A stretch of DNA of 64,000 bases, from positions 124,001 to 188,000 of the IMG/VR virus record IMGVR_UViG_3300042340_000379, one strand, 5' to 3'. Of this stretch, positions 31,500-58,400 are shown piece by piece (the first letter of the stretch is position 1; the number at the start of each line of letters is the position of its first letter). The notes beneath the pieces are model-generated. The model saw nothing but the letters and a program-made list of their open reading frames with translations, had not been told where the DNA came from and searched no databases. The translations under genes were made by a program, and so were the position numbers.

Positions 31500-32141
31500 A
31501 TGCAAAAGCTCATTTTTACTTTAATTTTAAGGTTAGGTTTGCTAGGAGCTGTACTTAGCGCGGGATTTCTCCTAGCTTTAGGCAAACTACCTGGCAAGAA
31601 TCAGCTAGCCGAGTTTGTGTTCTCAGATAAAGTTGATGTCGATGTGCGCGAGATTAAGCTGTCTGAGATCCAAGCAGTTGCTAAACTTATAACCGCTGAG
31701 CAAGATTACGAGGTTAATATTCCTCTGCGCTCAGACCGGGAAGTTTTAGGAACGGTTGTGGGTAGTACCAAGCTTATTTACATCGCAAGGGGAACCGTCT
31801 CTGCTGGAGTAGACTTAAGCAAAGTGACTATTAAGGATATTGAGAACACACCTGAAGGATTAGTCTTAAACCTACCCGCTCCAAAAATTCTCGAAACAGA
31901 ACTGGATGTATTTAAGTCTGCAGTGTTCGGGGAAAGCAAAAGTGTCTTTGGGCCTGACGTACTTGATAAGCTAGTCGTTCAGGGTCAACAAGAAGGAAAG
32001 ATTGCCATTATGGAGCAAGCTTGTAATAGCAACCTTCTCCTAGAAGCCGCCCAGAATGCTGAAAAGAGCCTGGCCGCAATTATCAAAGTTAACATACCTA
32101 ACGGTGATTGCTGGCAGGCTGAACAGACAAAAATGTCGTAA
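31500..32141 (+). CDS. DUF4230-like membrane-anchored protein
   Basis: N-terminal hydrophobic helix; YIARGTVSAGVDLSKV...LNLPAPKIL signature. Confidence 0.75.
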   Translation: MQKLIFTLILRLGLLGAVLSAGFLLALGKLPGKNQLAEFVFSDKVDVDVREIKLSEIQAVAKLITAEQDYEVNIPLRSDREVLGTVVGSTKLIYIARGTVSAGVDLSKVTIKDIENTPEGLVLNLPAPKILETELDVFKSAVFGESKSVFGPDVLDKLVVQGQQEGKIAIMEQACNSNLLLEAAQNAEKSLAAIIKVNIPNGDCWQAEQTKMS

Positions 32142-32771: not shown

Positions 32772-35700
32772 ATGGATCCCCTCTTCCCAGAATTAGACCC
32801 GGCTTTAATTGATAACCAGAACTCCGAAGTTCGAGAGCAAATCAGACGGTTAGAAAAATCAACCCCTGAAGATATTGCTCGCCAAGAGTTAACCACCCCT
32901 GACCTTAACTCCATAGGGATTAGTCGGGGGTTTAGACTTCACTACGGAGAAGTATCCGATCGCCCTGGCACACGCTACAACATGCTAGGGCAAAAGATCT
33001 ACGAACCACCGACTCTAGCAATGGAGTCTCAAGTTGGATTTTATGAGCCGGTCAGCGTTCGCGCCAACGTTTCTCTAGACCAATCCCTACAAGTTAGAGC
33101 TGTTAATGCAATCGACTCTATTAACTATGGACGTTCTGTATTAACTGGGCAGCAGCGAACTGTAACGAGTGGCTTAAACACTATGTTTGGGCGGCAGTTT
33201 AGAAGTTTAATGTATGACCAGCAAGTAAGAGCTGCCGGTCTTATGGGGTTAAGCCGAGAAGACACCCGCGCTCTTTTAGGAGAACCTGCAGTTAGAGAAG
33301 GGCTTTATCAAGACGCTGGCTTTAGAACACCCAGCCTTGAATCGATTATGGAGAATATGGGCACCGGGATGCCTAGCGCTGAACGCATCAGTGACATAAA
33401 TAGAATGGGCTTCTACGCCGATCGCTATGCAGATCCTGAGAGCGTTCAGAAACTTTATCGAGAAGTCAACCAACTAAAAAATGCCCTTGGCGATGGAATC
33501 AAATCTGTAGAAAAGCGCTATGCATACCGAAAAGTTAACGGCATGTACGAAAAAGTCCTTGTTGGCTTAAAGGTTGGAGTAAGAAATTACAATGACCTTT
33601 TTGACGGAATGGGTCTCTACAGCGGAACCAGCGCTCCTGCTGTTGAAAGAGAAACTGCTTTTAACTTTACTGTTGACTCTAAGGGCCAAGTAATTGAACT
33701 TAATACTAATAGGGTAATTAGTGGTTCGCTTATGGCCCTTGGGCCGTCCAGCATTTCTACTATTGTGGGTTCCTCTCTTATTGGAGGAGAAGGTCGCCGC
33801 CAAAGTAGTTCGGCTACAGCGCTGGGCCTTTTAGCTACTTACGCCAGGTCATCAGAGCTTGAAGCTCGGCACGGTGTTGTAGATGGTGTGTTTAACACCA
33901 TGATCGCACAAGGAGAATATGGTGCTCTTGGAAGAGTCTTTGCAGAAGCTCTTGTGTCTCGTAATGAGAAGTATGTCGCCAGCCGGGGCTTAAAATTTGG
34001 CGAAGTTGCTGGCCAAATGCTCAGCTCCGTCGGCCATAAAGATTTTAAGAAAGGTATTCATGAACTAATTGAGAGTATTTCCTATCGCGGTCTTGAGTAC
34101 TATTCCAGTCTCCATACTGTATTTAAGGAAAGCTTTGATGAAAACACAGCCCGCATGGAGCTGTTTAGAAACCGGCAGTCTCTTCTTACAGCTGCCTTTG
34201 ACCCTCTTCTAAATTACACGGGTGGGGAAGGCTCCAGATTTGATGGGTTAATTGACACCACAATGAAGCGGGTAGTTGACCTAATTCAATCTGATAGCAG
34301 TACCCAGCGGTTAAAAATTGCAGGTCAGGATGTAGACATTTCTCTATTTGATGACTTAAAAGTTGCGGCTTTAAACATGAGCCCAACAGGTCGAAGTGCT
34401 TACGACTTAAGAAAGAGTCAAGTCAGCCGCTCGATTCTGCAACTTATGATGTCGCCATTCCTAATGCCGCATGAGTCAGGCTACTCAGGGTCTCAGTCTT
34501 CCTCCCGCCTTGGATTGTTTGCCATGTCGGAAACTAGGGGTCAGCGGGGTATGTACGAGCTTTTTGCCATAAGCCCGTCAAAGCATACCCACGGAATGAA
34601 GAGCACAAAGCCTGGTGAGTACTACAAACCTATTGGCTCACAGAGCGCTAAAAGCTCTGTTATGAAATATATTGGCGGATTTTATAAATTTGACGACACT
34701 GCTGCTAAAGTAGCTGAGTTTTATGAGACAAAGACTTTATTTGCAGGTATGCCCTCATTAAAGCGTGCCAAGCTTGATGACATTCAGATTCACATGCAAA
34801 AAGCTGGATATAAAAGTTCTCGAGAGATTATCGAGAAGTATCGAGCAGAGATGCAGCTAAAAGAGGATAAAGATATTGAAGTTCTACTCATGCCATTTAG
34901 AAAGCCTGAGCAGATCTCCCAACGTCTTAAAAACTTGGTAGGGGGTAGACCCATGCTAGAAATAGCAACGGGTCTTCGCCGCGCAGTGATGAGCCAGAGT
35001 GGGCAGCAACTTCGAAGTTATTTCTCTGGAGGAGACTATGGCGTTTCCCTTGATGTGGGGAAAGCGTTAAGCGGCAACATTCCTGCCGCGCTAAATGACA
35101 TCCAGTATCAGCAGATGGAGCAAGAGAGATCGCGCATTATTGCTGAACTGGGTCTAGATGAAAAGAAAATAACGCCGAGACAGCAATCAGAGTTATCTCG
35201 TTTGCTAACCTCTCGTATGCGGGAAATTGAAACTCAGTTTAATGAAGGCGGCGGGTACATTCAAGGTAAAGCCGCTCGCTTAACCATGGTGGGCATGGGC
35301 GTGAACATGCTCTCTGACTTTATGCTCGTCAACCAGGAGTACGTCAACAACACAGCTTTTGGCTATCTACATCATTCCAAGTTTCGAGTTTCAGCTACTC
35401 AAAACGTTCGGTATGAAGGAGTGGGGCGAGTTACAGAAGCTGACCCTTATTTTGACTGGAAGACTAATCGCCTGGCGGAGGTGTTTAAAGCTGGTACCTC
35501 TATCTATCTATCACCTACCCCTCTAAAAAATGAGAGGGCAATGGAGATTCTTAAAAAGACCGCGCAAAGCATGAGGTCTGAGTTTCTTGCTCGAGGCATT
35601 AGCAAACGAGAGAGTGACGCGCAAGTAAGGCGCACGCTTCAAAGCAACTTCAAATTTTTAGAGAGCGTAGACATCAAAGATGGAGAAGTCACCAACGCAA

Positions 35701-38700
35701 CGATGCGGGCGGGTGCGTACTCGTTTGATGGGAATGATATGCGGTTCCAAGGTGAATTGGTTGGTTCCTCCCTCCGTCTTGGAATGCTGCCCACAAATAA
35801 TCGTCAGAGGTTAGGTGAGACTGGATTAAGCGGGGCGACTTCACTTGACTTCTTCGATGTAAAAATCCCCGGTGTAATCCGCTCAGTGTCTAAAGGCTTA
35901 GTTACGGTAGCCAATGACATAAACTTTGCTCCTTCTAGTGGGGGATATGAAGCAGACATTAATTTTCTGGTAACTTCAGATATTCCAAGTGGCTCTAGAT
36001 CCTCTTCTCTTACAAAAGGCCCTTGGTCTATGTATGAAAGTGAATCATTTTGGGCACGCGCTCGAGAGCAGGCTATTCAACATAGTTTTGTTTCTAAGCA
36101 AACAGCTCAAGAAGGGGTGTTTGGAATCTTAAGCCCAACCGCGTTTAAGGGTTACAACTACGAAGCTGGCTTAGATATTCTTAGGGATGCTGAATCTCGA
36201 CGGGATCTGCTAGCTATTCCTGCTGACCAAACTGCTTTTCTACTTGGTATAGCCTTTATGGAAAAAGGCGAGAAAGGCCAGCGGTTAAAAGCGGCTATGC
36301 GTGAGTATGCTAAAACTCAAAGCTTAGGCTCATCTGTCGGTCTTCTATTAGAAGATGTTAACTCGGGGTCTAGCATTGAAAAAATGCGGAATTTAATGCT
36401 CTCCACGCCTGACATTATTGAGTTTGCTGGGGGACAAAGCCTAGACCAAATGGGAGACTACCTTGCTCAACGATTTGAGACAGGAGACTTCGACCCGATT
36501 AAAAAGAGCTTAAACCGCATTGTTGGAAAAGCTCTGGACAAGTCTGTTCAAATGGAGCAGTATGTTGAAGGGCAGTCTAGTCTAGTTAGAACTTTCCAAG
36601 AAGGAGATTTTAGCGTTAGAAGTGCCGGTTTAGTTGCTGATGTACTCAATACAACTCGCCAATTAATTTATGGTGGCATGACTGTAGGTGATGACCCCCT
36701 CCAAGGATATGCTCTTGTAGACAAAGAGAAGGGCGCTCGAGTCGATCGCTTTATTGAAGATAAAGACTTCCGAGCCGCAACTTTAGATATAGCACAAAAG
36801 ATGGGAGTTAGAAGTCTGCTTCCTTCCCAGCTTAAGTTAGAGGGAGCCCTAAGCAGCCTTAAAGAAGGAGACGAACTCTACTCTCAAGTAGAGTCAATGC
36901 TCTATTTAATGCATGGTCATTTTAGTACTTCTCCTTTAGTAGCTCGCGCTTCAAATATGCTACCTAGCAGAATCCTAGTAGCCGCTGGTTCAGAAGATGC
37001 CGTAGCTCTAGAATTTCATTACTCTCTCAACTTAAGCAAGCGAGAGTTTGGCATGTTGCGCGGAACAGGCGTGGACATAGAGAAGTTTACAGACTTACAA
37101 GCCGCTTATGGCGTTGTGGCTACTCACGGCTCAGCCAACAGTACCTCTCGAATGATGCAAGTTATCAGCCCGTTTAGTACTGATAAGACTCAAGCAGGCG
37201 TGGCTAAAACAATGTCCCGTCTTATCGAGGGTTACAACGACTTTAGCGGCAAGTTCAAATTCTTAGGCAGCGTTGGAAATCTCAGCCTTCTTGATGAAGT
37301 TGTTCGGTCAATGGTGACTGGAAAGACCGATCGCACGCTACAGCTAATGGCTAGCTATGACTTAGCTAACAGAGCGCTTCGTCATCAAAAAGGTTTAGGG
37401 CAATTTACTGAGCAGACGGTAATGAACGTCGCCGGGGCCTTTAACCCAGGAAGCCTTGATTTAGACAGTGCTTCATTTAGTCAATTGGCCGACCTGGCTA
37501 ACATTTATGGGGTAAAAGGAAATACTAAAGAAGAGCTAGCCAAAGGGTTACGAGAAACTGGGCCAATACTTGGCAGAGGTATTCCCTACTATGGGCCTTC
37601 AAGAAATCCGTTCGAGATTAAGCGGATGGCAATGGCTCGGGCTGTTATTGACTTATCTAAACGACAAAAACAAAAAGGGCACGGCTCCCTAGTCTTTGGA
37701 GTCACTTCAGATAATGAAGATGTCAGAGACATCATGAAACGGGAGCGACTAAGCGCTTATGGATTTGGCTACTCAGACTTTAGGCAAGCTCTTGATTTAG
37801 TAAGTGATACTCAAACAGGGCGTCTTCTTTCTGACGGGAATGGCGACAAAGATCACGTTCAAAGAATTGCGGGGCGGCTGCAAGATCATGACCGCTCAGT
37901 AGAACTTATGATGGAAAAAGCGGCGGGCACCTCAGACACAGAGTCTTTTGTGGATGTTCTATATAAAGTAGTCTCTGGTGCTCAGCAAGTTATTGAAAAT
38001 ACTGAACGAGGTTCTGATGATTATAAGCGGGCCGAACGCTTAAGAAGTGAGGTCTATCAAACCAAGTCTCTTTTGATGCCTTTTGTTCAAACAGCTCGGG
38101 ATGGGTCGAAAGGAATCATTAGTCTGTATGACCCAACAGAAATGGGCGGTCAGTTACGATTCACCGGAACACCTGCCATTCGCTTGGGTCTTGATGTTCT
38201 GTCTAAAGTCCCCGCCCAGTTTGAGGATCACATTTCTGAGGTTGTAGATCGGCAGCGGCAGATATGGGAGATTCTCCCTGAATTCCAAAGCATTATGGAT
38301 AGGCTCACAACCGGGCCCATCATGGATGCTAACTTAGGTGAGATTTCTGTCATTGAAGAGATGCAGCGCCTGGCTATTCAAAGCCAAGAGGATGCCGCGC
38401 TTCTCTTTGGTAGCGTTATGGCCCAACGATCGCAAGGGGAGAAAATTAAGTACCCTGGCGTTTCCTTTGTTGCAGTAGCTGATTATCTAGCTACTCCTAT
38501 GGAAGCTTTTGTTGGTAGCCGGGTTATGGGAACTGGCTTAGACCAAGTTGTCCGAGATGCCCAAGCTAGCCTAAATGGAGAAGAGCGGAGAAACAATCGA
38601 TGGGAAGCAGAGAGAGAAAGGCTTCTAAAGCGAGCGGTTACTCATAGCCAATCAACTGAAAAATCAGTCCAGAATAAATTTAAGCTGGCCCAGCGTCGGC

Positions 38701-41700
38701 GTATGGAGCTTCTACGCCAGCGAGTAAACATTAGAAAAAACCTTAACGAGAATGTTGGGCGGTTAAAAGAAGAGCAGCGCGTTATTAAAAAAACTCGTGA
38801 GAGAGTTTTTAAGCAAGAACGGGGTGCAAACTACCAAGCGTATAGACTTGATGGGCTTAGCCAAAGATATAACCATGCTCAAGCTGAGATATATGGTGCT
38901 AGAGATAACTCTCAACGAGAACTGAGAGAGCTAAATCCTGAACTCAATCGATTGCGCAAAGATACAAAATTTATGCAGCGGCAGTTTGTTCAAAACAAAC
39001 TTCACCAGTTTGTTGTTGAAGGCCAGCACGTTTCTATCTTTAACAAAGAATTTATTGCTGGAATTGGCGCACGCGATGGAGTTGTGCAAAGCGAGCTACG
39101 AAGCATGATTGCTCAAGCTCCTGAGGGATTTGTCGAAGGACTTAGCTCAGGAGAAATTTCAGACCAAAACTACTATGACAAGTTTGTGTCAGTTCTAAGT
39201 AAAGTAGACCAGCAAGGTCAAAACATCTACAGAGCTGAGCTGGCCGGAATTGAAAGCGCAATGGGCCACGCTCTTAGAGATGGCTCAGGTTCTAGAAGCG
39301 ATCAGCGTCAAATCAAAAAATACATGGGGCGGCGAGCTGCCTTTAACCAAACTCAGCAAATTGGGTTTGACTTCAAACCTCAAGAATTCGCTGCTCTTCA
39401 AAAGCTTCAATCACTGACTGGCTACGTTAACAGAGCGGGTGGCCCTAGCGGCGGCTCTATTGTTAACCAGCAGCACTCAATCCAAAACGTTGAGCGTCTA
39501 AAAAACAAACAAGTCTCTGAAGGCAACCAACTCTCACTAGCTCTTGATGGAAACCAGACCGCGCTAATTGTCTCAATGTATGGCCGGTTTGGCGTGCAGG
39601 GCGGTGACTTTGACGGTGACGCTTACCAGCTCGTCTTTGGATTTAGAGACATTCAAGAGTCCTTAGTTAAATCAATCAACAAACGGAATCAGATGGAAGA
39701 TTCCAAATTGGCCCTTGAGCTTGAAATGGGGAGCGGGGAATATGGCAGAGATGTTCTTTTGCGTCGAGCCCAGCTTAGCAACCAAATTCGAGTTGAACAA
39801 CAAGGAATTGACGGTCTAATCGGAAAACTTGATAACCAATTCCAAATGGCTGGAGAGCAGATAAGCCAAGGTGTTCGTCGTCACGTCTCTTCTTTAACAG
39901 GTGTTCCCTTGTCAATTATGTTGAACAAGGACGTGTACAGTGATGAACAAGTCTCTAATATGATCGAGCAGCAACGGGGGATTACGCCTGGCTTAACCGA
40001 CTTTGGAGATTCTTATGGTGGCGAGGCCACGTCTTACGGCTTCTTATTCAACGACATTAACCAAGACCTTGGAAGTCTAAACGGAAGTCTTGGAGATTAC
40101 CTAGACACTAAATTGGAAGGAAAGCCCTACGGATTAGACAAAGCTCAGCTTAGCCAATTTAAGCAGTTGACAGAAGAAGCCATGTCTAAACTTGACTTGG
40201 TAAACTCAAATGCTTCTGAACGAGCCCAAGCCTTTGGAGTAGAGTTGGGAACTCTAAATAACCTGCGCATGAGTTTGGATACCACCCAAAAGTTCATTCA
40301 GTCAGCGGCGGGTACAGTTCTTGACATGAAGTCTTTTGATTTAATGCAAGATGCAATTGGTTATGTGGGTACTTCTCTAATCGGGGAAGGCTACAACGCA
40401 ATCACCAGCATGATAGGCCGGTCTACCCTAGCGCGAACTTTAGCTCATGGACTTGGCGCTGAGTCAATGGTCGGCTTAGACACCGCAGCCCTAAATCTTG
40501 GAGGACAAATTCAAGAAAGACTTGATTATCTATTTGCTGGTGGAGAGAAAGCAAATACGTCCAGCAATATTAAAGAGAAGTTCGCAGTCGATGAGATAAA
40601 ACGCACCGCCTATTTTGCTCAAGAGAAAAGCCAACAAATTAGCGGTAAGCTGACCATGATTCAGCAAATGATCCGAGACTCTCTAAAACCCAAAGAGGCT
40701 GGAGGTCTTATTGGAGCCATAGTTGATAACTCTGCAGATGGGGAAGCGTTCAGAGAAAAGTTTGACCGACTAGAGAAAAAGGAAGAGCGTTTAGACGCGC
40801 TACGAAACTTTGTGTCTACTAGAGCCGTTACCTCAATGGTAGATACAAATGAGCGGGGGCTCATCAACGCTTTTGGTGCCATCTTCTTAATGGCTGATTA
40901 CACCAAGGAAAGTTCTCCTGAGAAAATGCTTAGCGACAAATCTGATCGCTATAGTGTTCTGCGCCAAACTCGAGAGCTATATGAAAAACAGTCTTCCAGG
41001 CTTCAGCAAGGTAAAGGTTTAAGTTCAGATTTAGATACTATCACGCGCCTCCGTCTTCAAGACCCAGAGTTTAGAGACAAGATGGTAAATGATGATGGGT
41101 TCCTAATCCGTCAGACCGTTGTTGACTTAATCAATAGTGCTACTGCACAAGAGACAACCTCCAAATACTTAGGTTACGATGCTAATGATAGAGTTAGACA
41201 AGCCAACGTAATAAGAGAACAGTACATTGGTGCTTTAGCATCAGAGCGTGGACTTCTCGATGCTTCGTCTGACTTCTACTTTAAAAACGAGCAGCATCAA
41301 ATGGCTATGATGAGTGCTCTTAATATCAAAGAACAGGACATTCTTGGCTATACTCAAGGCCAAGTTCAGAATGTATTTTCAGATAGTAATGCAGCTTTTA
41401 AAGCTTTAACGGAAAGAACATTTGTTGAGTCAACTTATCTAGGAATGGGACAGGAAGACTTAGAGTTCTCCAGAAATGTCATTCAGGCTGGTCGCTCCTT
41501 AGAGTTTATGGAGTTTGGGAACCAAATAGCATTTGCGCCTTTTGCAGCAGCTCAAAGCGAAAACCTTGTAGCTATAGAACAGTTAATGCGTCGGGGTAAA
41601 TTAGATGACCCTGCTTTAATGAGAGAGGTTCAAATCAACAGCTCGGCAAGATTGTTTGATGCAATCGCCAAGGTCAGCACAAAACTTACCTCTCAGTATG

Positions 41701-42854
41701 GTTCTTTAGAATCAGCCATTAGTAAAGAGGAAGTGTATAAAGGCTATTCTCAAATGGCAGAGCTGGCTGGAGTATTTGATGTTAGTCGTGATGAATCTAA
41801 CATGCTTTCTTTAGCCATGGCAGCTAAACCTGACGGTAAGCAGTCTATCTTCGAGCAGCTTGCTGATTTGTCAGCTGGTCGCGCTAATGTTGAAGAGAAA
41901 TATAACCAAATTTCAGATATTCACCAGGAAATGAGTACTGCTACTGGAACTCGTAAACAGTTTCTAGAGCAGCATCTAGCTCTACTTGAAGGTTCACTTG
42001 ACTCTTATAGACAAGGAATTTCAACAAATGACACCAGCGCAGTAAGAACCGCACTGGCTGAAATTGGAAATAAAGAACGTCAATTTAGAACTGATCAGTT
42101 TAAAAAAGACGAGCGCGGCAGGCGGCTATTAATTCATAGCGCTGGAATGATGCACGTCGCGTCAGGTTCTCAAAGTATGGGCGTGGTCAATACGCTTGGT
42201 CTGTTTGCAGCCCCTGTTGTTGGAGCTGCTCTTATGAGTGGCGCTGGATTAGATGAGCGGCTAGTCCTGGGCGGGTACGATTTAATGCAGGGTCTATCTA
42301 CAGCTGAAGGATTTGCGGATAACAAAATGGCTCAGGCGACTAACAGCATGTTTATCATGAGCCGATTACGCCAGCAAATGGCCGAGCAAGAAAGTCTATT
42401 TCTAGGTTCTGTAAAAGGCGTAGCGACAGAAGCACTTTACACAGGCCTAGCAGGGCTCGCCAGCCAAGCGTCCACCAGCCTTATGCGAGCAGCCGGGGCG
42501 CGGCAGGCAGCAGGAGGTTTAGGATCCGCACTTGCTGAAGCAGTCGTGACAGCGGCTGCTTTAGCTTTTTCTCGTAAAGGAAGCCAGTATGGCGTTCAAG
42601 ACGAGGATTACAGTAGTCTAATGGCGCAATCTTTGTTAGACATGGCTCAGTCTACAGAGAACATGATACAAGCTATGATTGAGAGGGCCCAAGACATTGA
42701 GGTCGAAACAGAAGACCAAATTGTCACGTTTGACTTTGATGCATCTATGGCACCCACAGAATATGAAGAGCGGGTGACTGCTGGGTGGATTGAGTTCTCT
42801 GTTGCCTCTGATGAGTTTGATTCTGTCTACTCTGAAATTGGAAATTACGCTTAA
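32772..42854 (+). CDS. Giant protein with two-barrel RNA polymerase motifs (putative virion RNA polymerase / ejected protein)
   Basis: 3360 aa; GGDFDGD (DFDGD at 39606-39620, residues 2279-2283) preceded by VNRAGGP; hydrophobic Gly/Ala-rich C-terminus; located among virion genes. Confidence 0.7.
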   Translation: MDPLFPELDPALIDNQNSEVREQIRRLEKSTPEDIARQELTTPDLNSIGISRGFRLHYGEVSDRPGTRYNMLGQKIYEPPTLAMESQVGFYEPVSVRANVSLDQSLQVRAVNAIDSINYGRSVLTGQQRTVTSGLNTMFGRQFRSLMYDQQVRAAGLMGLSREDTRALLGEPAVREGLYQDAGFRTPSLESIMENMGTGMPSAERISDINRMGFYADRYADPESVQKLYREVNQLKNALGDGIKSVEKRYAYRKVNGMYEKVLVGLKVGVRNYNDLFDGMGLYSGTSAPAVERETAFNFTVDSKGQVIELNTNRVISGSLMALGPSSISTIVGSSLIGGEGRRQSSSATALGLLATYARSSELEARHGVVDGVFNTMIAQGEYGALGRVFAEALVSRNEKYVASRGLKFGEVAGQMLSSVGHKDFKKGIHELIESISYRGLEYYSSLHTVFKESFDENTARMELFRNRQSLLTAAFDPLLNYTGGEGSRFDGLIDTTMKRVVDLIQSDSSTQRLKIAGQDVDISLFDDLKVAALNMSPTGRSAYDLRKSQVSRSILQLMMSPFLMPHESGYSGSQSSSRLGLFAMSETRGQRGMYELFAISPSKHTHGMKSTKPGEYYKPIGSQSAKSSVMKYIGGFYKFDDTAAKVAEFYETKTLFAGMPSLKRAKLDDIQIHMQKAGYKSSREIIEKYRAEMQLKEDKDIEVLLMPFRKPEQISQRLKNLVGGRPMLEIATGLRRAVMSQSGQQLRSYFSGGDYGVSLDVGKALSGNIPAALNDIQYQQMEQERSRIIAELGLDEKKITPRQQSELSRLLTSRMREIETQFNEGGGYIQGKAARLTMVGMGVNMLSDFMLVNQEYVNNTAFGYLHHSKFRVSATQNVRYEGVGRVTEADPYFDWKTNRLAEVFKAGTSIYLSPTPLKNERAMEILKKTAQSMRSEFLARGISKRESDAQVRRTLQSNFKFLESVDIKDGEVTNATMRAGAYSFDGNDMRFQGELVGSSLRLGMLPTNNRQRLGETGLSGATSLDFFDVKIPGVIRSVSKGLVTVANDINFAPSSGGYEADINFLVTSDIPSGSRSSSLTKGPWSMYESESFWARAREQAIQHSFVSKQTAQEGVFGILSPTAFKGYNYEAGLDILRDAESRRDLLAIPADQTAFLLGIAFMEKGEKGQRLKAAMREYAKTQSLGSSVGLLLEDVNSGSSIEKMRNLMLSTPDIIEFAGGQSLDQMGDYLAQRFETGDFDPIKKSLNRIVGKALDKSVQMEQYVEGQSSLVRTFQEGDFSVRSAGLVADVLNTTRQLIYGGMTVGDDPLQGYALVDKEKGARVDRFIEDKDFRAATLDIAQKMGVRSLLPSQLKLEGALSSLKEGDELYSQVESMLYLMHGHFSTSPLVARASNMLPSRILVAAGSEDAVALEFHYSLNLSKREFGMLRGTGVDIEKFTDLQAAYGVVATHGSANSTSRMMQVISPFSTDKTQAGVAKTMSRLIEGYNDFSGKFKFLGSVGNLSLLDEVVRSMVTGKTDRTLQLMASYDLANRALRHQKGLGQFTEQTVMNVAGAFNPGSLDLDSASFSQLADLANIYGVKGNTKEELAKGLRETGPILGRGIPYYGPSRNPFEIKRMAMARAVIDLSKRQKQKGHGSLVFGVTSDNEDVRDIMKRERLSAYGFGYSDFRQALDLVSDTQTGRLLSDGNGDKDHVQRIAGRLQDHDRSVELMMEKAAGTSDTESFVDVLYKVVSGAQQVIENTERGSDDYKRAERLRSEVYQTKSLLMPFVQTARDGSKGIISLYDPTEMGGQLRFTGTPAIRLGLDVLSKVPAQFEDHISEVVDRQRQIWEILPEFQSIMDRLTTGPIMDANLGEISVIEEMQRLAIQSQEDAALLFGSVMAQRSQGEKIKYPGVSFVAVADYLATPMEAFVGSRVMGTGLDQVVRDAQASLNGEERRNNRWEAERERLLKRAVTHSQSTEKSVQNKFKLAQRRRMELLRQRVNIRKNLNENVGRLKEEQRVIKKTRERVFKQERGANYQAYRLDGLSQRYNHAQAEIYGARDNSQRELRELNPELNRLRKDTKFMQRQFVQNKLHQFVVEGQHVSIFNKEFIAGIGARDGVVQSELRSMIAQAPEGFVEGLSSGEISDQNYYDKFVSVLSKVDQQGQNIYRAELAGIESAMGHALRDGSGSRSDQRQIKKYMGRRAAFNQTQQIGFDFKPQEFAALQKLQSLTGYVNRAGGPSGGSIVNQQHSIQNVERLKNKQVSEGNQLSLALDGNQTALIVSMYGRFGVQGGDFDGDAYQLVFGFRDIQESLVKSINKRNQMEDSKLALELEMGSGEYGRDVLLRRAQLSNQIRVEQQGIDGLIGKLDNQFQMAGEQISQGVRRHVSSLTGVPLSIMLNKDVYSDEQVSNMIEQQRGITPGLTDFGDSYGGEATSYGFLFNDINQDLGSLNGSLGDYLDTKLEGKPYGLDKAQLSQFKQLTEEAMSKLDLVNSNASERAQAFGVELGTLNNLRMSLDTTQKFIQSAAGTVLDMKSFDLMQDAIGYVGTSLIGEGYNAITSMIGRSTLARTLAHGLGAESMVGLDTAALNLGGQIQERLDYLFAGGEKANTSSNIKEKFAVDEIKRTAYFAQEKSQQISGKLTMIQQMIRDSLKPKEAGGLIGAIVDNSADGEAFREKFDRLEKKEERLDALRNFVSTRAVTSMVDTNERGLINAFGAIFLMADYTKESSPEKMLSDKSDRYSVLRQTRELYEKQSSRLQQGKGLSSDLDTITRLRLQDPEFRDKMVNDDGFLIRQTVVDLINSATAQETTSKYLGYDANDRVRQANVIREQYIGALASERGLLDASSDFYFKNEQHQMAMMSALNIKEQDILGYTQGQVQNVFSDSNAAFKALTERTFVESTYLGMGQEDLEFSRNVIQAGRSLEFMEFGNQIAFAPFAAAQSENLVAIEQLMRRGKLDDPALMREVQINSSARLFDAIAKVSTKLTSQYGSLESAISKEEVYKGYSQMAELAGVFDVSRDESNMLSLAMAAKPDGKQSIFEQLADLSAGRANVEEKYNQISDIHQEMSTATGTRKQFLEQHLALLEGSLDSYRQGISTNDTSAVRTALAEIGNKERQFRTDQFKKDERGRRLLIHSAGMMHVASGSQSMGVVNTLGLFAAPVVGAALMSGAGLDERLVLGGYDLMQGLSTAEGFADNKMAQATNSMFIMSRLRQQMAEQESLFLGSVKGVATEALYTGLAGLASQASTSLMRAAGARQAAGGLGSALAEAVVTAAALAFSRKGSQYGVQDEDYSSLMAQSLLDMAQSTENMIQAMIERAQDIEVETEDQIVTFDFDASMAPTEYEERVTAGWIEFSVASDEFDSVYSEIGNYA

Positions 42855-44316: not shown

Positions 44317-44832
44317 ATGAGCGCCTCTACCCCCCTTATTGGAATTGCCCACCAAATTACCCGGTTTCTTAGAGACCAGGTTCACCTTATGGCGATAGGG
44401 AATACTGTCACACCCTGGGCTACAGAAGGAATCGCGCCTTCTATTCCAACTACTCTGCTAGCTCTTCCTGAAATCTGCGGCTACTTCCCAATCAAAAGAG
44501 CAAGCCCAATTGTCCCTCACCAAAATGGAGAGATTCTTTCAGATGGGAGAAAATGGATTGAAGTTCATGGAAATGAGACAGACCTAGCCGCCGCTGCTTG
44601 TCGAGCTATTCTGTTTGAAGCCGACATTCGCCACTCGGTTATTCCTATTCAAGTTCTTAAATATAGAAGCGCGGGGCTGTTCACAGGCTGCTTTGTCAAT
44701 GAGGCGATCGACGCTCAAAGCTTCTTTCTGCCTAACGAAATCGTTGGCTACTTAGACAGCGCTTGGTACTTTCCTGCAATAGAAGTTCAAAGCAATCAAA
44801 TTCAAACTCTCCAACTTATTAGGAGATTCTGA
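44317..44832 (+). CDS. Putative baseplate structural protein
   Basis: MAIG.T.TPW..E..P..P......PEICGY pattern, seen in ~170 aa baseplate proteins of large myoviruses. Confidence 0.55.
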   Translation: MSASTPLIGIAHQITRFLRDQVHLMAIGNTVTPWATEGIAPSIPTTLLALPEICGYFPIKRASPIVPHQNGEILSDGRKWIEVHGNETDLAAAACRAILFEADIRHSVIPIQVLKYRSAGLFTGCFVNEAIDAQSFFLPNEIVGYLDSAWYFPAIEVQSNQIQTLQLIRRF

Positions 44833-49569: not shown

Positions 49570-49772
49570 GGTTCAAAATCAGGGTCACAGTTTATCAATA
49601 AATACTCGCCGTTTAGAACGACCGGCTTATCAGAATAAACCCATACCCCGTCACCTAATGTAATCGCGTAATGGTCACTTGAAATTAAAAGGCAGTTGTC
49701 CTGAACTTTTGCATATTTAGCCAAGTAGGCTAAAACTTTAATCAGATTAATTAGCTTAGTTAACAAAGACAT
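49506..49772 (-). CDS. Small spike-associated hypothetical protein
   Basis: 88 aa with short beta repeats ending VVLNGEYLLINC; next to the PAAR-like gene. Confidence 0.45.
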   Translation of the reverse strand: MSLLTKLINLIKVLAYLAKYAKVQDNCLLISSDHYAITLGDGVWVYSDKPVVLNGEYLLINCDPDFEPCQKTQDSQATEQLQTVSADY

Positions 49773-50007
49773 TTGGACTCCCTTGAATAGCTATACCCCG
49801 CCCTGAATTACGATCGCCAATCCTATGAACCGCTCGATTGCCAGCAAAAACAGTAGGCGAACCACTAATTGCAAAAAAGTTAGTAATTATATCTCCAACT
49901 GATGAGGCCTTTCTATTGTTGACAAAAACGTTTCCAAAACAACGAGTCACAGGCCTTTTCCCCACAAAAGTTGTCTCTAGATCCCTAAGTCTAGTCCAAG
50001 CTGGCAT
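49756..50007 (-). CDS. PAAR-like spike tip protein (T4 gp5.4-like)
   Basis: NVFVNNRKASSVGD, GSPTVFAGNRAVHRIGD and GSPNVFVN repeats. Confidence 0.8.
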   Translation of the reverse strand: MPAWTRLRDLETTFVGKRPVTRCFGNVFVNNRKASSVGDIITNFFAISGSPTVFAGNRAVHRIGDRNSGRGIAIQGSPNVFVN

Positions 50008-52200: not shown

Positions 52201-52263
52201 ACAAAAATTTGGGTAATAAGTGTTCAACAGACTCCCTTAGTATAAGCTAAATTTTTGGGTTGT

Positions 52264-52408
52264 GGGCCATAAAAGGCCCGACGCGGGCCCTAATCGGACT
52301 TTCTAGGGCCCTAAAGGGCCCAACGCGGGACGTGAAGGGCCCTTCACGGGACATAGACGGCCCGACGCGGGCCCTAAAGAGACCAAAAAGGGCCCGTGAA
52401 GGGCCCTA
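52264..52408. repeat. parC-like array 1: about 14 GGGCCC/GGGAC-type boxes at 10-11 bp spacing, upstream of parM
   Basis: gggccataaaa-ggcccgacgc-gggccctaatc-ggactttcta-gggccctaaa-gggcccaacgc-gggacgtgaa-gggcccttcac... Confidence 0.75.
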
Positions 52409-52432
52409 GGCAAACTTGTATCGTACAAAAAC

Positions 52433-54370: not shown

Positions 54371-54443
54371 ACCCTTTAATTCATAGCCGAGCCACAGGCT
54401 TAATTGTTCATGGCAAAACGCAAACATTACCTGGAGAACATCT

Positions 54444-54644: not shown

Positions 54645-54662
54645 TCCCAATCTTTTTATCAT

Positions 54663-55238: not shown

Positions 55239-55418
55239 ATGGCCCTCTTTCTCTTCATTCTCTTTTTCATTTCCCTCTGTCTTTTCTTTGCAGAGGACAA
55301 AGTAAGCCAACCCAGAATTACGCCTGACATGCTCCTTAGCAAAAAAGGCAAGCCTCTATATGGGGCAACTTTGCAGGCTCGCATCGAAAAGCTAGAGCGA
55401 GCTGGGTACATCCTTTAG
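55239..55418 (+). CDS. 59 aa membrane-anchored protein sharing a 31 aa motif with the downstream polymerase
   Basis: Not in the ORF track; GGAGAAC RBS; MALFLFILFFISLCLFFAEDKVSQPRITPDMLLSKKGKPLYGATLQARIEKLERAGYIL. Confidence 0.75.
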   Translation: MALFLFILFFISLCLFFAEDKVSQPRITPDMLLSKKGKPLYGATLQARIEKLERAGYIL

Positions 55419-55492
55419 TTCACAGCCGAGCCACAGGCTTAATTGTTCATGGCAATTTTCAAGCAACAACTAATCAACTGGAGAACAAACCC

Positions 55493-58400
55493 ATGAAATC
55501 CTTCACCAAATCTCTGAATTCTTTTGTTACCCGCTCCTTCTCTGTGGGTAAGCGCCAAATGATCTCTAAGGTCAAAATCGTTCACTCTAAGCGCGAGTTC
55601 ATCTCGCGTGTTTCTGGCACCTTTCGCCAGCGCTTGAACCCTGCTACTCCAAAGTCCATTTTTGCTTGGGACGATGTTCAGCTCTCCTTAGCCTTTACTT
55701 ATGGCCAAGGTTCTCTAGGAATCAAAGCTGACCGCGCCAACGCTGGCATTGGGTTTGGTAGTGATACCAAACCTAAATCTAAATCTGTTAAGTCCGATTC
55801 CATCAAAATCGCACACACCTTTAAGGAGATCCTCGCCCAAACCAAAGCTACCGCTGTCAAAGTCTTCGAGGCCATTTCCACCGTTTCTAAACTGATTACT
55901 CCCGATCTTCTGCTCTCTTCTACAGGTAAGCAGCTCTATGGAGCTGCTCTTAAAAACCGGATTGCCAAACTTGTTCGTGAGGGCTACGCAGCCCCTGTTT
56001 CTCAACCTGCAGCGGTAAAGGCCGTTGACTTCATGGCGCTTGCTCAAGAGCGCTGCGCCCAAAGCCTTGCTGCGATCGAAGCAGCTATGGGCTTCACATC
56101 CACGGGCACCGTTGTGGCCATGCTTCAATCCGGCCAGGAGCCTGCGCCCATTGCGCGGCAGTCCGCCTCAAATATGGAGAACATCTCATTGTTTGAACTC
56201 AGGGCAAAAGAATTTCCAGCTCCTTCTGTCGAGGAGCTAATGTCTGACCTAAATGGCGATCGCGCCACCCGCGCTGAAAAGTGCAAAGCCATCTTGGCTA
56301 AGCACAACCTCAACACAGTTGGTGAGCTGATCGCTCGCGGCATGGTGTCTCGCACCCGCAAAGACTTCTGGCTCGATAGTGCAAGCACTGCGTTCAGTGT
56401 GATGCTACTGGGCCACACTCTTGGCCAAATGCCCGCGCCTCTGGACTTCAAGGCTGGGAATACCTACCTGGTAGGTTTCCCTCTGTTTGATCGCACCTCT
56501 GGCGACAAGCAGATTTCCCCGTACAAGTGCGTCATAGGAGATATCGATCTCCTGATGGCGTCTGTTCGTAGAGAAGAGCACGACATAAAGAACCTATCTT
56601 CTCCTGCTACCAAGAAGGTGTTTAAGAAGCACTTTAAGGTGCTAGAAGATAACTGCAAAGCCCTGGGCCTGTGGTTGTCTAAGGACGAAGTGGCTAACAT
56701 GGCCGCTGCGTTGGCCATTAATGAAGTGGCTACCAAGCCCACCACTTTCGCGGTGCTGGCTTCCCACCTCTGCGAAGTCCTTGATGCTATGGGCATGATG
56801 CCCAACCGCGTGTATGCGGTGAATGCTGCGTGGAACCTTCCCCGCTACAAAGCGGATCGCGTTATTGTGCGTAAGTTGGTAACCGCACTGCTGCGGGCCC
56901 AAGAGGGCATCGGCATGACAGGGTTCAAGTTCATCGACATGTCCACCAGCGAGCAAACTGGTGAGCTATTTGATGAAGTCGTTATCTGTGGCCAACGCTT
57001 TGTCATGGATGACGAAGGCGTTATCTTTGATGACGCAGGTACATCAAAACGGCTAAACCAGATAATGTTGGCTGCTCCCATTAAGGTAGGCCGCAGTCTA
57101 CACCCCAACGAGTTCTCTATCTTGAGCGCTCACGACGTGTTGTTGTATCTGCTGGACAACATTGTGCTGCCCATGCTCAACCGAAAGGATGTCAAATCTG
57201 ACAAGAGCTTGGAAATCAGCCGTGTTGAGGAAACCAACGCTCGTGCTGCCCAGTCCATCAAATCGTTTATTGGCAAATCCATGCCTCTAAACGAGCGGGC
57301 TGTTGCGCTTGGTGTTGAAGATGCTGCCTCCAGCATTCTGACCAGCGGCGAAATCAGCTGCGTTGTCAAGTGGCATCAATCTCTCTTCCGTCGCAACATT
57401 GCGGCTGAGGGTTCAGCAGAGATCGCCATCTTCAAAGAAGGCATGCTAGTTGGGCCTGATAGTCCCTACAAACGCTCGGCTGATGCTACCGAGTATATGA
57501 TCTTTAGCCAAATGGAGTTAAAGACCTCCACCAATTTCACCGACTATCACCCTCTCATCGAGCCTATGATCGCTCATGGCAAAGTGATTCAGCCTTTTGG
57601 CAACATGAATGCTGTAAGCCTTTCTGCTCACGGTACTCACTATGCCAACCTTGATGTGAGCATTCAGAAAGAAGCTGTCAAAGCTTTCTGGGCTAACCAA
57701 GGCCTTGATGAGCAACAGCTGCGCTCTAAGTTCAACCTTGAAGGTGTAGTCGGTGATGTGTGGATGCACATTGCTGAAGAAACCCTCAACTTCTTGTCCT
57801 ACAAGGGCTCTAAGCGTTTCAAGCGCTCGGCTAACTTGTACGCTCAAGTCACCAGCTTCGCGTTTGAAGAGACCAGCCGCTTCCAGTGGTCTGGTCACGT
57901 TGATCACCAGATCACCGGCCTGGCGCTCAAGGCTGTGTTAGCTCCTAGCTACGTTTTCTCTGGGCCTGGTATGGCCTATATGAACTCGCACAAGCGTGCT
58001 CAATACGAGATGCGCTACCCCTTGGCTGGTGGCATGCATGACTACTACGATCGCGCTGCTGTGTTCAGTAACTTCGCGATTGATGATACTGCTATCATCA
58101 CCAATCCTCTCACGGGCTGGAGCCATATTGACCTGGACATCAAAGTCCGGGAAGGGCAGGAGACTGGCTTGTTTATCGTGAACGAACATGGCCATCAGGT
58201 TCCTCTAAAAGCTGAGCACAATGGTGTGCTTTGCAAAATTCGTTTCCGCACTGTCGATAAGTTCTCCGTTAACGGCGTATTGGAGTGTCGCCTCTTTTAT
58301 AAAGTGTCTGAGTACGACTTCAAACTGCGGGCTGGCTATAAAGCCATGACTACCTATCATGACGGGTCGATCTTTGACCATAACGCCTACGCTCCCGAGT

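What the first reader, a model, noticed from the sequence alone, without database searches (positions are those of the whole stretch)
32772..42854. 3360 aa putative virion RNA polymerase in a contractile-tailed phage, with a membrane-like C-terminus
Seen in sequence: VNRAGGP followed by GGDFDGDAY. An upstream segment (SRSSSLTKG...FGILSPTAFK) parallels the KLRAGYKA...WDIIIPGDANK segment of the 1829 aa protein. A long basic coiled-coil-like insert precedes the catalytic barrel, and the C-terminus has Gly/Ala-rich hydrophobic helices. Knowledge: DxDGD is the Mg-binding motif of two-barrel polymerases, and crAss-like phages package giant single-chain polymerases of this kind. Inference: an ejected polymerase, possibly also acting as a tape-measure or channel protein, since it lies near the tail chaperone and no separate tape measure gene is evident in the window.
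Basis: partly seen in the sequence, partly recalled or inferred. Interest (0 to 1): 0.8.

Follow-up and report, generated by a model that had tools for sequence, protein, structure and literature searches.

The report
Giant cysteine-free phage RNA polymerase candidate
A 3360-residue protein of a freshwater contractile-tailed phage carries the catalytic core of a cell-type (two-barrel) RNA polymerase and looks built to be injected with the DNA, which matters because its cultured relatives, the Microcystis bloom phages, are published as having no polymerase of their own.

Summary
The ORF (32772-42854, +, 3360 aa) and all quoted motifs are real. It has no Pfam, PHROG, PDB-sequence or GenBank-phage BLAST match. 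An exhaustive profile search found about 40 clusters of giant proteins (3000-5100 aa). All full-length members keep GD[FYW]DGD, plus an upstream R-x-G-x-P and downstream G..YN and QQ..RD..K.K motifs.

One member is gp080 of the cultured Microcystis phage Ma-LMM01. A model of a connector-less ortholog matches bacterial RNA polymerase beta' in its top 43 PDB hits (probability 0.87-1.0, but E only 0.009-0.14). The second barrel is inferred, not shown.

Evidence for injection is indirect:
- The gene sits between head and baseplate genes.
- About 35 family members have no cysteine at all, as do the proven virion polymerases N4 gp50 and P23-45 gp96.
- The C-terminus has conserved hydrophobic Gly/Ala helices.

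The 1829-aa protein (18 Cys) resembles YonO/RdRP-type polymerases and is the likely non-virion partner.

No "tail chaperone" is nearby. No tape measure gene is seen, and the slot after the tube gene is empty, so a tape-measure role stays open. Verdict: a new variant of virion two-barrel polymerases, not yet recognised in this phage group.

The parts
32772..42854 (+). ORF of the 3360-aa giant protein, with no cysteine
   Evidence: Purifying selection in a second lake population: 31 synonymous, 6 non-synonymous changes, no indels.
34893..34952 (+). N-terminal invariant motif PF.K.EQI.QRLKN..G.RP (aa 708-727). It belongs to a conserved N-terminal module (about aa 550-1130) of unknown function.
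   Evidence: K711, Q714, Q717, R718, K720, N721 and R726 are invariant in 25 of 25 aligned members, as are D849 and N854.
35994..36170 (+). It is conserved (R1076, K1082, P1084, K1126, G1133), but its function is unassigned.
   Evidence: Conservation. No similarity to the 1829-aa protein. No structure model was made for it.
38016..38531 (+). Candidate beta-like barrel (DPBB-B) with a helical insert, aa ~1749-1920. G1896 and R1917 are invariant; basic residues at 1885/1886/1891 are mostly kept.
   Evidence: It is the conserved block at profile positions 200-400 in all family members. It abuts the DFDGD barrel in P0002. The fold assignment is inferred, not matched to a beta subunit.
38544..39371 (+). 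Variable basic coiled-coil connector, aa ~1925-2200, in the position of the clamp connector
   Evidence: Absent in P0002 and more than 1000 aa in P0032. Low-confidence long helices. K+R-rich.
39414..39656 (+). Beta'-like catalytic barrel (DPBB-A), aa ~2215-2295, with R2221-x-G2223-x-P2225 on its first strand
   Evidence: Invariants. Strand pattern. Foldseek top 43 PDB hits are bacterial beta'.
39606..39620 (+). DFDGD (aa 2279-2283), the presumed Mg-binding aspartate triad
   Evidence: D2279, D2281, G2282 and D2283 are invariant in 34 aligned sequences.
40305..40397 (+). Bridge-helix-like conserved block, aa 2512-2542 (AAG.VLD ... GTSLIGEGYN)
   Evidence: G2538 is invariant; G2514, G2530, G2533, Y2541 and N2542 are nearly invariant. 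The block is helical in both models. The assignment is inferred from position and conservation.
40650..40706 (+). Trigger-loop-like conserved block, aa 2627-2645 (IQQ..RDSLKPK..GG)
   Evidence: Q2632, R2635, D2636, K2639 and K2641 are invariant. tblastn to Ma-LMM01 gp080 covers this region. The functional assignment is inferred.
42177..42251 (+). Hydrophobic Gly/Ala-rich segment 1, aa 3136-3160
   Evidence: Hydropathy. Conserved in orthologs and in the family consensus.
42513..42569 (+). Hydrophobic Gly/Ala-rich segment 2, aa 3248-3266, followed by an acidic tail
55493..60982 (+). 1829-aa second polymerase-like protein (18 Cys), the candidate non-virion RNA polymerase. It carries VRAPMTR ... 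NMGDFDGDG.
   Evidence: Motifs. ESM Atlas look-alikes score 0.95-0.96 with 195-204 shared features and are clusters carrying PF05183 RdRP. The Pfam HMM itself does not hit.
59825..59839 (+). DFDGD of the 1829-aa protein (aa 1445-1449)
   Evidence: Conserved in P0004.
55407..55455 (+). 49-nt conserved element 38 nt upstream of the 1829-aa ORF, with a second copy at 54368-54416. It is a candidate promoter or regulatory site.
   Evidence: (2 exact 22-mers; 0 expected). Its function is untested.

Best explanation
The ORF encodes a giant single-chain protein whose central third (about aa 1750-2800) is a two-barrel, cell-type RNA polymerase module. In order, the module consists of:
- a beta-like barrel;
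- a dispensable coiled-coil connector;
- a beta'-like barrel that holds the Mg-binding DFDGD;
- a bridge-helix-like block and a trigger-loop-like block.

The protein is most likely made late, built into the virion and translocated unfolded through the contractile tail into the host. There it would transcribe the first phage genes independently of the host enzyme. Those genes would include the 1829-aa YonO/RdRP-like polymerase, which would then take over as the intracellular (non-virion) enzyme. The conserved hydrophobic Gly/Ala C-terminus would serve in membrane insertion or exit.

What is shown: motif conservation, family, synteny, predicted beta'-like fold, absence of cysteine. What is inferred: polymerase activity, packaging, ejection, the division of labour with the 1829-aa protein, and where in the virion the protein is stored.
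For: 1. **Motif conservation.** GD[FYW]DGD, R2221/G2223/P2225, G2538/Y2541/N2542 and Q2632/R2635/D2636/K2639/K2641 are invariant or nearly so in 34 sequences that share only 16-45% identity.
2. **Predicted fold.** An AlphaFold model of the connector-less ortholog P0002:1700-2500 (pLDDT 76.7) has bacterial RNA polymerase beta' chains as its top 43 PDB matches, with probability 0.87-1.00, E 0.009-0.14 and about 350 aligned columns. In the viral library, after Ma-LMM01 gp080 and one low-probability uncharacterised protein, the next confident match is a 'DNA-directed RNA polymerase' (probability 0.96). Tape-measure and minor-tail hits have probability below 0.2.
3. **Module layout.** Two conserved blocks separated by a connector of 6 to more than 1000 aa fit the barrel-connector-barrel plan of single-chain two-barrel polymerases (PMC10770324).
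4. **Cysteine.** There are 0 Cys in 3360 aa. Other window proteins average 0.67%, which gives P about 2e-10. About 35 family members also have none. The experimentally proven virion polymerases show the same trait: N4 gp50 0/3500, P23-45 gp96 0/5002, phi14:2 gp66 2/2180. N4 replication enzymes have 1.1-1.4% Cys and the window's 1829-aa protein has 18 Cys.
5. **Gene position.** The gene always lies beside the portal and head genes, and in the window is followed by baseplate-wedge and PAAR genes.
6. **Second polymerase.** A second polymerase-like gene sits at the end of a run of small genes, each followed by a terminator-like hairpin and T-run. Ma-LMM01 has the same pair, gp080 plus gp064 (QRTPMG ... 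GDADGDQ), and gp064 lies next to its early cluster.
7. **Selection.** The gene is under purifying selection in nature.
Against: - No Foldseek match reaches E 0.001, TM-scores are low (about 0.15), and model confidence is moderate (pLDDT 66 and 77).
- The first, full-length-connector model of the window protein gave no significant match.
- Profile searches against PDB sequences, and hhalign against rpoC, rpoB, gp96, gp64 and gp66, found nothing beyond the motif.
- The second barrel has no structural match.
- There is no proteomic, biochemical or transcript evidence for packaging or activity.
- The published Ma-LMM01 transcriptome was interpreted as fully dependent on host sigma-70, with no host shut-off (PMC5780444).
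- Low cysteine also occurs in some other structural proteins of this window, and P23-45 gp64, a non-virion enzyme, also has none.
Confidence: 0.55

Rival explanations
1. The protein is the tail-lumen tape measure or ejection conduit of this contractile tail, with a polymerase module fused inside it. This would be a myovirus counterpart of P23-45 gp96. It would sit in the tube, leave first on contraction, form the channel with its hydrophobic C-terminus, and transcribe the entering DNA.
For: - No ORF in the window matches a tape-measure family. The only hit is a weak one inside the M23 peptidase part of the 1024-aa hub-like protein.
- The canonical slot after the tube gene is a 590-bp gap with no minus-strand ORF of 50 aa or more and no chaperone gene.
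- ESM Atlas look-alikes of aa 2195-2800 and aa 2801-3360 are mostly tape-measure families, including Gly-zipper ones, though only at scores of 0.82-0.88.
- There is a precedent in P23-45 gp96, which is also cysteine-free and has a membrane domain (PMC10770324).
Against: - The gene is not in the tail module. It lies next to the portal, on the other strand from sheath and tube.
- No tape-measure Pfam or PHROG profile hits.
- Foldseek tape-measure hits have probability below 0.2.
- Atlas scores under 0.9 are stated by the tool to be leads only.
- The window covers only part of the genome, so a tape measure may lie outside it.
- Ma-LMM01 has a 623-aa gene (gp093) directly after its tube gene.
Confidence: 0.15
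2. It is a genuine two-barrel RNA polymerase, or a related nucleotidyl transferase, that is not packaged. It would work inside the cell, for example on middle or late genes, and the 1829-aa protein would have another role.
For: The catalytic-module evidence is the same as for the best explanation. No direct evidence of packaging exists. Phages with non-virion single-chain two-barrel polymerases are known: YonO, and P23-45 gp64 (PMC10770324).
Against: - A size of 3360 aa, of which only about 1100 are polymerase-like.
- Family-wide absence of cysteine, in contrast to the 1829-aa protein.
- Conserved hydrophobic C-terminal segments.
- Constant position among virion genes.
- N-terminal PLD-like domains in most relatives, which suit an injected effector better than a housekeeping transcriptase.
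Confidence: 0.15
3. It is a structural or ejection protein without polymerase activity. The GDxDGD loop would bind metal for another purpose (for example Ca-dependent folding after ejection), and the beta' resemblance would be a modelling artefact driven by long helices.
For: - Foldseek E-values never pass 0.001 and TM-scores are low.
- No sequence-profile link to any polymerase.
- The language-model look-alikes are tail proteins.
Against: - The motif is not isolated. The spacing and identity of R-x-G-x-P ... (about 55 aa) ... GDFDGD-[SA]-Y mirror NRAPTLH ... NADFDGD of beta' (comparison from established knowledge of beta').
- Further invariant blocks lie where the bridge helix and trigger loop are expected.
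- 43 consecutive top PDB hits to one protein family, at probability 0.87-1.0, would be an unusual artefact.
- The genome carries a second polymerase-like gene, as the known virion/non-virion systems do.
Confidence: 0.12

Closest known systems
P23-45 gp96 (tape-measure-fused virion RNA polymerase) together with gp64 (non-virion polymerase), Thermus siphovirus (PMC10770324)
   Same: - A giant virion-type protein with DFDGD, paired with a second, smaller two-barrel polymerase gene in the early region.
- No cysteine (0/5002).
- A hydrophobic membrane-like part.
- No sequence similarity to other polymerases beyond the motif.
- A short or disordered connector between the barrels, as in P0002.
   Different: - The host phage has a contractile tail.
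- The polymerase module is central (about aa 1750-2800), not N-terminal.
- The gene is next to the portal, not in the tape-measure slot.
- No metallopeptidase domain and no tape-measure profile.
- hhalign finds no relationship to gp96 or gp64.
- The two window proteins do not resemble each other. The smaller looks like the RdRP/YonO type, while the larger matches beta' best.
crAss-like phage virion RNA polymerase (phi14:2 gp66, PDB 6VR4)
   Same: - A large single-chain two-barrel enzyme with a DFDxD motif.
- Encoded among virion genes and packaged.
- Almost cysteine-free (2/2180).
   Different: - crAss-like phages have short tails and infect Bacteroidota.
- There is no profile similarity, and 6VR4 is not among the 50 PDB matches listed, of which 48 are RNA polymerase largest-subunit chains.
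- The window protein is 1.5 times longer, with a conserved N-terminal module and a hydrophobic C-terminus.
N4 gp50 virion RNA polymerase (3500 aa)
   Same: - A three-part plan: a long N-terminal region, a central polymerase of about 1100 aa, and a C-terminal region.
- Similar size.
- No cysteine (0/3500).
- Delivered with the DNA.
   Different: N4 gp50 has a T7-like right-hand polymerase fold, not a two-barrel one, and N4 is a podovirus. The resemblance is functional, not homology.
Multisubunit virion and non-virion polymerases of jumbo myoviruses (phiKZ, AR9)
   Same: - Contractile-tailed phages that inject a beta/beta'-like polymerase and encode a second one.
- The best structural matches of the window module are beta' and phage 'DNA-directed RNA polymerase' entries.
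   Different: Those enzymes are split into four or five subunits of ordinary size. Here everything is one 3360-aa chain, and the phage group is unrelated (Ma-LMM01-like).
Ma-LMM01 gp080 (YP_851094.1, 3562 aa, 'hypothetical protein'; UniProt entry named 'PLD phosphodiesterase domain-containing protein')
   Same: - Member of the same family: profile E 6.5e-70, LGDFDGDTF at 2535, one cysteine, same position beside the portal.
- Best match in the viral structure library (E 3.5e-5).
   Different: - Only about 26% identical, in the best-conserved block.
- Carries an N-terminal PLD/HKD domain that the window protein lacks.
- Its genome is about 162 kb.

Membership tests
Two-barrel (double-psi beta-barrel) RNA polymerase superfamily | DxDxD metal-binding aspartate triad on a loop of the beta'-like barrel | tested here: met
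   DFDGD lies at aa 2279-2283. D2279, D2281, G2282 and D2283 are invariant in 34 sequences, and GD[FYW]DGD is present in all full-length members. In both models the loop sits between predicted strands.
Two-barrel (double-psi beta-barrel) RNA polymerase superfamily | Fold of the catalytic region resembles the beta'/Rpb1 core (barrel A plus following helices) | tested here: met
   The model of ortholog P0002:1700-2500 has bacterial beta' as its top 43 PDB hits, with probability 0.87-1.00, E 0.009-0.14 and about 350 aligned columns. Caveats: no hit has E below 0.001, TM is about 0.15, and the coordinates could not be inspected. The longer model of the window protein itself gave only E 4-8 hits to Pol I A190 and beta'.
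Two-barrel (double-psi beta-barrel) RNA polymerase superfamily | Second (beta-like) barrel supplying conserved basic residues to the active site | tested here: inconclusive
   The conserved block at aa ~1749-1920 has predicted strands, invariant G1896 and R1917, and mostly basic 1885/1886/1891. It has no structural or profile match to a beta subunit. A second candidate at aa 1075-1133 has near-invariant K1082 and K1126 but was not modelled.
Two-barrel (double-psi beta-barrel) RNA polymerase superfamily | Bridge helix and trigger loop downstream of barrel A | tested here: inconclusive
   Invariant helical blocks lie at aa 2512-2542 and 2627-2645, at plausible distances from DFDGD. The assignment rests on position and analogy only.
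Two-barrel (double-psi beta-barrel) RNA polymerase superfamily | Template-dependent RNA synthesis | not testable with these tools
   Needs biochemistry.
crAss-like virion RNA polymerase (gp66 family) | Detectable sequence, profile or structural kinship with gp66, in a crAss-like genome | tested here: not met
   hhalign of the family profile against phi14:2 gp66 gives probability below 1%. 6VR4 is not among the top PDB matches. The genome is Ma-LMM01-like, with sheath and tube genes.
Tape-measure-fused virion polymerase (P23-45 gp96 type) / tail tape measure proteins | Gene in the tape-measure slot (after tube and chaperone genes), and a match to tape-measure profiles or domains | tested here: not met
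   The gene lies beside the portal, on the opposite strand from sheath and tube. There is no Pfam or PHROG tape-measure hit. Only weak Atlas look-alikes appear, at 0.82-0.88. This lowers membership but not the possibility that the protein travels through the tail.
Virion-packaged, ejected proteins | Presence in purified virions and entry into the cell with the DNA | not testable with these tools
   Only indirect evidence exists: no cysteine, as in N4 gp50 and P23-45 gp96; position among virion genes; hydrophobic C-terminus. No virion proteome of a relative was found in the literature searched.
YonO / QDE-1-type single-chain polymerases (Pfam PF05183 RdRP), for the 1829-aa protein | Match to the RdRP family and a DxDGD motif preceded by an R-x-P strand | tested here: inconclusive
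   The motifs VRAPMTR ... GDFDGDG are present and conserved in P0004. ESM Atlas scores are 0.95-0.96, with 195-204 shared features, to clusters carrying PF05183; 67 of 100 hits fall in that set.

The most novel reading that the evidence does not exclude
The giant protein is a multi-enzyme injected 'toolkit' that also takes the place of the missing tape measure of a contractile tail. Stored unfolded in the tube lumen, it would leave first and insert its Gly-zipper C-terminus into the membrane as the DNA conduit. It would then transcribe the incoming DNA at the pore, so that transcription helps pull the genome in. In most relatives it would also deliver a PLD-type nuclease or phospholipase. This would account for the empty slot after the tube gene, the absence of a chaperone gene, and the tape-measure-like language-model features.
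Probability: 0.15. Interest if true: 0.9.

Novelty: new variant of a known kind. Interest (0 to 1): 0.78.

Why it matters
- Virion-delivered two-barrel RNA polymerases have been demonstrated in only three kinds of phage: crAss-like podoviruses (single chain), one group of Thermus siphoviruses (single chain, fused to the tape measure) and jumbo myoviruses (multisubunit). A single-chain, 3000-5000-aa version in ordinary-sized contractile-tailed phages would be a fourth, independent solution.
- This family has no sequence-detectable link to the others, and its best structural matches are to cellular beta'.
- It includes gp080 of Ma-LMM01 and thereby the Microcystis bloom phages. These are stated in the literature to lack any RNA polymerase and to depend on host sigma-70 throughout infection (PMC5780444, PMC9927357). 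If gp080 and gp064 are polymerases, the model of how these phages take over bloom-forming cyanobacteria needs revision. Because Ma-LMM01 is in culture, the question can be tested directly.
- The complete absence of cysteine in the two proven virion polymerases checked (N4 gp50, P23-45 gp96; phi14:2 gp66 has only 2 in 2180 aa) and in this whole family suggests a simple sequence marker for giant ejected proteins.

Tried and rejected
- **Family scans of both large proteins.** Pfam and PHROG gave nothing.
- **GenBank phages.** Megablast and tblastn of the giant gene, and tblastn of the 1829-aa protein, found no match.
- **PDB sequence searches.** Profiles of 4 and of 34 sequences returned only coiled-coil noise. 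A profile of the 1829-aa pair returned nothing.
- **hhalign.** The family profile, and its two sub-blocks, against single sequences of E. coli rpoC and rpoB, P23-45 gp96 and gp64, and phi14:2 gp66 gave probabilities below 2%, anchored only on the motif. This is uninformative, because the templates were single sequences.
- **First structure model.** The model of the window protein with its 265-aa connector gave no significant Foldseek match. I replaced it with a model of the connector-less ortholog.
- **The 1024-aa ORF 9097-12171 as a tape measure.** Rejected as unlikely. It has M23 peptidase and lysozyme hits, and termini that I read as baseplate-hub-like. That reading is from the sequence and my own knowledge, not a profile hit.
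- **RNA genes.** Rfam and tRNA scans of the window found none.
- **Promoters.** A sigma-70 and terminator scan around the gene showed no enrichment and no promoter-like site upstream of the gene.
- **RNA-seq.** No run holds this phage, only three small metatranscriptomes with 7% of the capsid-gene words, so expression could not be examined.
- **Literature.** Searches found no description of this family as a polymerase.
Full report
**Observation**

The window has one uninterrupted ORF at 32772-42854 (+), 3360 codons.
- VNRAGGP at aa 2219-2225
- GGDFDGDAY at aa 2277-2285
- SRSSSLTKG starting at aa 1075
- FGILSPTAFK at aa 1117-1126

The 1829-aa ORF (55493-60982, +) holds GDFDGDGD at aa 1444-1451. 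The basic helical insert (aa ~1925-2200) and the two hydrophobic Gly/Ala segments (aa 3136-3160 and 3248-3266) are also real.

The gene is a working gene. A 95%-identical copy exists on an independent contig (P0001). A second lake population differs over the last 5 kb by 31 synonymous and 6 non-synonymous changes, with no indels.

**Genome context**

The phage has a contractile tail:
- sheath at 13543-17070
- tube-like gene at 12765-13502
- major head protein at 21150-22478
- Mu-type portal at 28503-29924

By head, portal, tube and sheath proteins (27-43% identity) it is a distant relative of the Microcystis phages Ma-LMM01 and MaMV-DC and of a Microcoleus phage. It occurs in several lake-water metagenomes.

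The giant gene lies divergently from the portal. On its own strand it is preceded by a DUF4230 gene and a 111-aa ORF. After one convergent gene it is followed by a 'baseplate wedge 3 tail fiber network' gene (PF25691). A PAAR gene lies further on. None of these is a tail chaperone.

**Family**

Neither large protein matches Pfam, PHROGs, PDB sequences or any GenBank phage by BLAST. A word-indexed search found three relatives. An exhaustive profile search with aa 1520-2700 found 41 cluster representatives, nearly all 3200-5100 aa long.

Two blocks are shared by all of them, corresponding to aa ~1720-1920 and aa ~2205-2685. The stretch between the blocks varies widely:
- 6 aa in P0002
- 265 aa of coiled coil in the window protein
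- more than 1000 aa in P0032

GD[FYW]DGD is kept in every full-length member. Across 34 sequences of 16-45% identity the invariant residues are G1896, R1917, R2221, G2278, D2279, D2281, G2282, D2283, G2538, Q2632, R2635, D2636, K2639 and K2641.

The N-terminal half has its own invariant signature: K711, Q714, Q717, R718, K720, N721, R726, D849 and N854. Its function is unknown.

About 17 of 25 members carry an N-terminal PLD/HKD domain (seven of them also hit Pfam PLDc_2). The window protein and its closest relatives lack it.

Ma-LMM01 gp080 (3562 aa, annotated as hypothetical) belongs to the family. The profile E-value is 6.5e-70, LGDFDGDTF sits at aa 2535, and the gene has the same position beside the portal. 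The synteny portal <- -> giant gene holds in all contigs examined.

**Is it a polymerase module?**

The sequence pattern is R-x-G-x-P on a strand, about 55 residues, then GDFDGD-[SA]-Y. This mirrors NRAPTLH ... NADFDGDQM of bacterial beta'. That comparison rests on established knowledge of beta'; it is not a tool result.

I made two AlphaFold models:
- **Window aa 1650-2840.** pLDDT 65.9, with the connector disordered. It gave no significant Foldseek match, though four RNA polymerase largest subunits appeared at E 4-8.
- **Connector-less ortholog P0002:1700-2500.** 44% identical to the window protein over the full length, with the same invariant residues; pLDDT 76.7. It gave bacterial beta' chains as the top 43 PDB matches, at probability 0.87-1.00, E 0.009-0.14 and about 350 aligned columns.

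In the viral structure library the best match is a piece of Ma-LMM01 gp080 (E 3.5e-5). After one low-probability uncharacterised protein, the next confident match is a 'DNA-directed RNA polymerase' (probability 0.96). Tape-measure and minor-tail entries have probability below 0.2.

In both models DFDGD sits on a loop between strands, with the strand-strand-helix-strand pattern expected of barrel A.

- The E-values are weak.
- The TM-scores are low.
- I could not inspect coordinates.

The second barrel is not demonstrated. The block at aa 1749-1920 has the right place and predicted strands, and it directly abuts barrel A in P0002. But no beta subunit was matched.

**Is it injected?**

No direct evidence is available. 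The indirect lines are these.

1. **No cysteine.** The protein has none in 3360 residues. The other 35 ORFs of the window average 0.67%, which gives P about 2e-10. About 35 family members of 3000-5100 aa also have none, and gp080 has one. The comparators are:

| Protein | Role | Cys / length |
|---|---|---|
| N4 gp50 | proven virion polymerase | 0 / 3500 |
| P23-45 gp96 | proven virion polymerase | 0 / 5002 |
| phi14:2 gp66 | proven virion polymerase | 2 / 2180 |
| N4 DNA polymerase, primase, helicase | intracellular enzymes | 1.1-1.4% |
| window 1829-aa protein | candidate non-virion polymerase | 18 / 1829 |
| Ma-LMM01 gp064 | candidate non-virion polymerase | 24 / 1673 |

   This fits a protein that must pass unfolded through a narrow channel and an oxidising compartment. 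The trait is not fully specific: P23-45 gp64, a non-virion enzyme, also has no cysteine.
2. **Position.** The gene sits among virion genes in all relatives.
3. **C-terminus.** Conserved hydrophobic Gly/Ala helices are followed by an acidic tail.
4. **A partner polymerase.** Residues 1100-1829 of the 1829-aa protein have ESM Atlas look-alikes at 0.95-0.96, with 195-204 shared features, that carry PF05183, the RdRP (YonO/QDE-1) family. The gene ends a run of small genes, each followed by a terminator-like hairpin and T-run, and is preceded by a 49-nt element that occurs twice.

Ma-LMM01 has an analogous pair. Its gp064 (1673 aa) carries QRTPMG ... GDADGDQ and aligns weakly (E 0.012) with the catalytic region of P0004. 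It sits next to the published early cluster gp054-gp063 (PMC5780444).

**Tape-measure question**

I found no tape-measure match in the window. The space between the tube-like gene and the 1024-aa protein is a 590-bp gap with no minus-strand ORF of 50 aa or more. It is filled with 5-nt-period GAGTT-type repeats and hairpins. I read the 1024-aa protein as baseplate-hub-like; it has M23 peptidase and lysozyme hits.

Language-model look-alikes of the central and C-terminal parts of the giant protein are mostly tape-measure families, but below the tool's own reliability line.

Against a tape-measure role:
- The gene is not in the tail module.
- It hits no tape-measure profile.
- The window is only part of the genome.

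I keep this as a rival at 0.15, and as the most novel reading.

**Comparison with known systems, and novelty**

The system works like the virion plus non-virion polymerase pairs of P23-45, phiKZ and N4, and like the packaged crAss polymerase. It fails the membership tests for the crAss gp66 family and for tape-measure-fused gp96.

I found no paper that describes this family as a polymerase. Papers on Ma-LMM01 and MaMV-DH01 state that these phages lack an RNA polymerase and rely on host sigma-70 (PMC5780444, PMC9927357).

I rate it a new variant of a known kind, with interest 0.78. The probabilities are:

| Claim | Probability |
|---|---|
| Central module is a two-barrel polymerase-like domain | about 0.8 |
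| Full model (packaged, ejected, early transcription) | about 0.55 |

Noticed in passing
window 12172-12764: The gap between the tube-like gene and the 1024-aa hub-like gene has no minus-strand ORF of 50 aa or more. It contains three blocks (12246-12323, 12445-12517, 12645-12712) of imperfect 5-nt-period repeats, GAGTT/GAGNN on the minus strand, plus hairpins with T-runs. The repeat occurs almost nowhere else in the window. This is where a myovirus normally has its chaperone and tape-measure genes.
   Followed up: partly
window 52284-52410 and 60988-61141: There are two arrays of GGGCCC-containing repeats with a 21-nt period. One lies just upstream of the ParM/Alp7A-like partition gene (51145-52227, minus strand). 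The other lies immediately after the stop codon of the 1829-aa gene. They may be centromere-like or regulatory iterons. Together they bracket the early-looking region.
   Followed up: no
window 54368-54416 and 55407-55455: A 49-nt element occurs twice at 92% identity, with an exact shared 22-mer (none expected by chance). Each copy lies just before a gene start, and the second is 38 nt upstream of the 1829-aa ORF. It is a candidate phage-specific promoter.
   Followed up: partly
window 52987-53045 and 53056-53114; 54639-54692 and 55163-55216: A tandem 59-nt duplicate includes a palindrome, a ribosome-binding site and a start codon. Separately, a 54-nt terminator-containing element is repeated after two small genes. 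The region 52.9-55.5 kb is a chain of small genes, each followed by a terminator-like hairpin and T-run.
   Followed up: no
window 56000-62000: G+C is 52% across the 1829-aa gene, against 43-46% in most of the window. This could reflect a different origin or a different constraint on this gene.
   Followed up: no
window 9097-12171 (-): A 1024-aa protein combines an M23 peptidase motif (aa ~255-330), a lysozyme domain (aa 414-543; phrog_90, E 6e-35) and termini that look like a baseplate hub. It is probably the cell-wall-digesting hub of the tail.
   Followed up: partly
family members P0013, P0017, P0020 and others; Ma-LMM01 gp080 aa ~287 (L002:5204-15892, -): Most members of the giant-protein family carry an N-terminal PLD/HKD (phosphodiesterase) domain with two H.K motifs. 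The window protein and its nearest relatives lack it. If injected, it could act as a nuclease or phospholipase.
   Followed up: partly
L012:41312-46333 (-) = Ma-LMM01 gp064: This 1673-aa hypothetical protein (24 Cys) carries QRTPMG ... GDADGDQ at aa ~1300-1352 and has a marginal BLAST match (E 0.012) to the catalytic region of P0004. It lies next to a 42-bp repeat array and the published early gene cluster gp054-gp063. It is a likely counterpart of the window's 1829-aa protein.
   Followed up: partly
window 44317-44832 (+) and 49756-50007 (-): The first is a baseplate wedge 3 tail-fiber-network component (PF25691, E 2.8e-8). The second is a PAAR spike-tip protein (PF05488, E 4e-8). Tail-tip genes are therefore split between two distant parts of the genome.
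   Followed up: no
window 31500-32141 (+): A DUF4230 protein (E 4.7e-24) is encoded directly upstream of the giant gene on the same strand. It has no counterpart next to the giant gene in the two related loci compared, L001 and L003.
   Followed up: no
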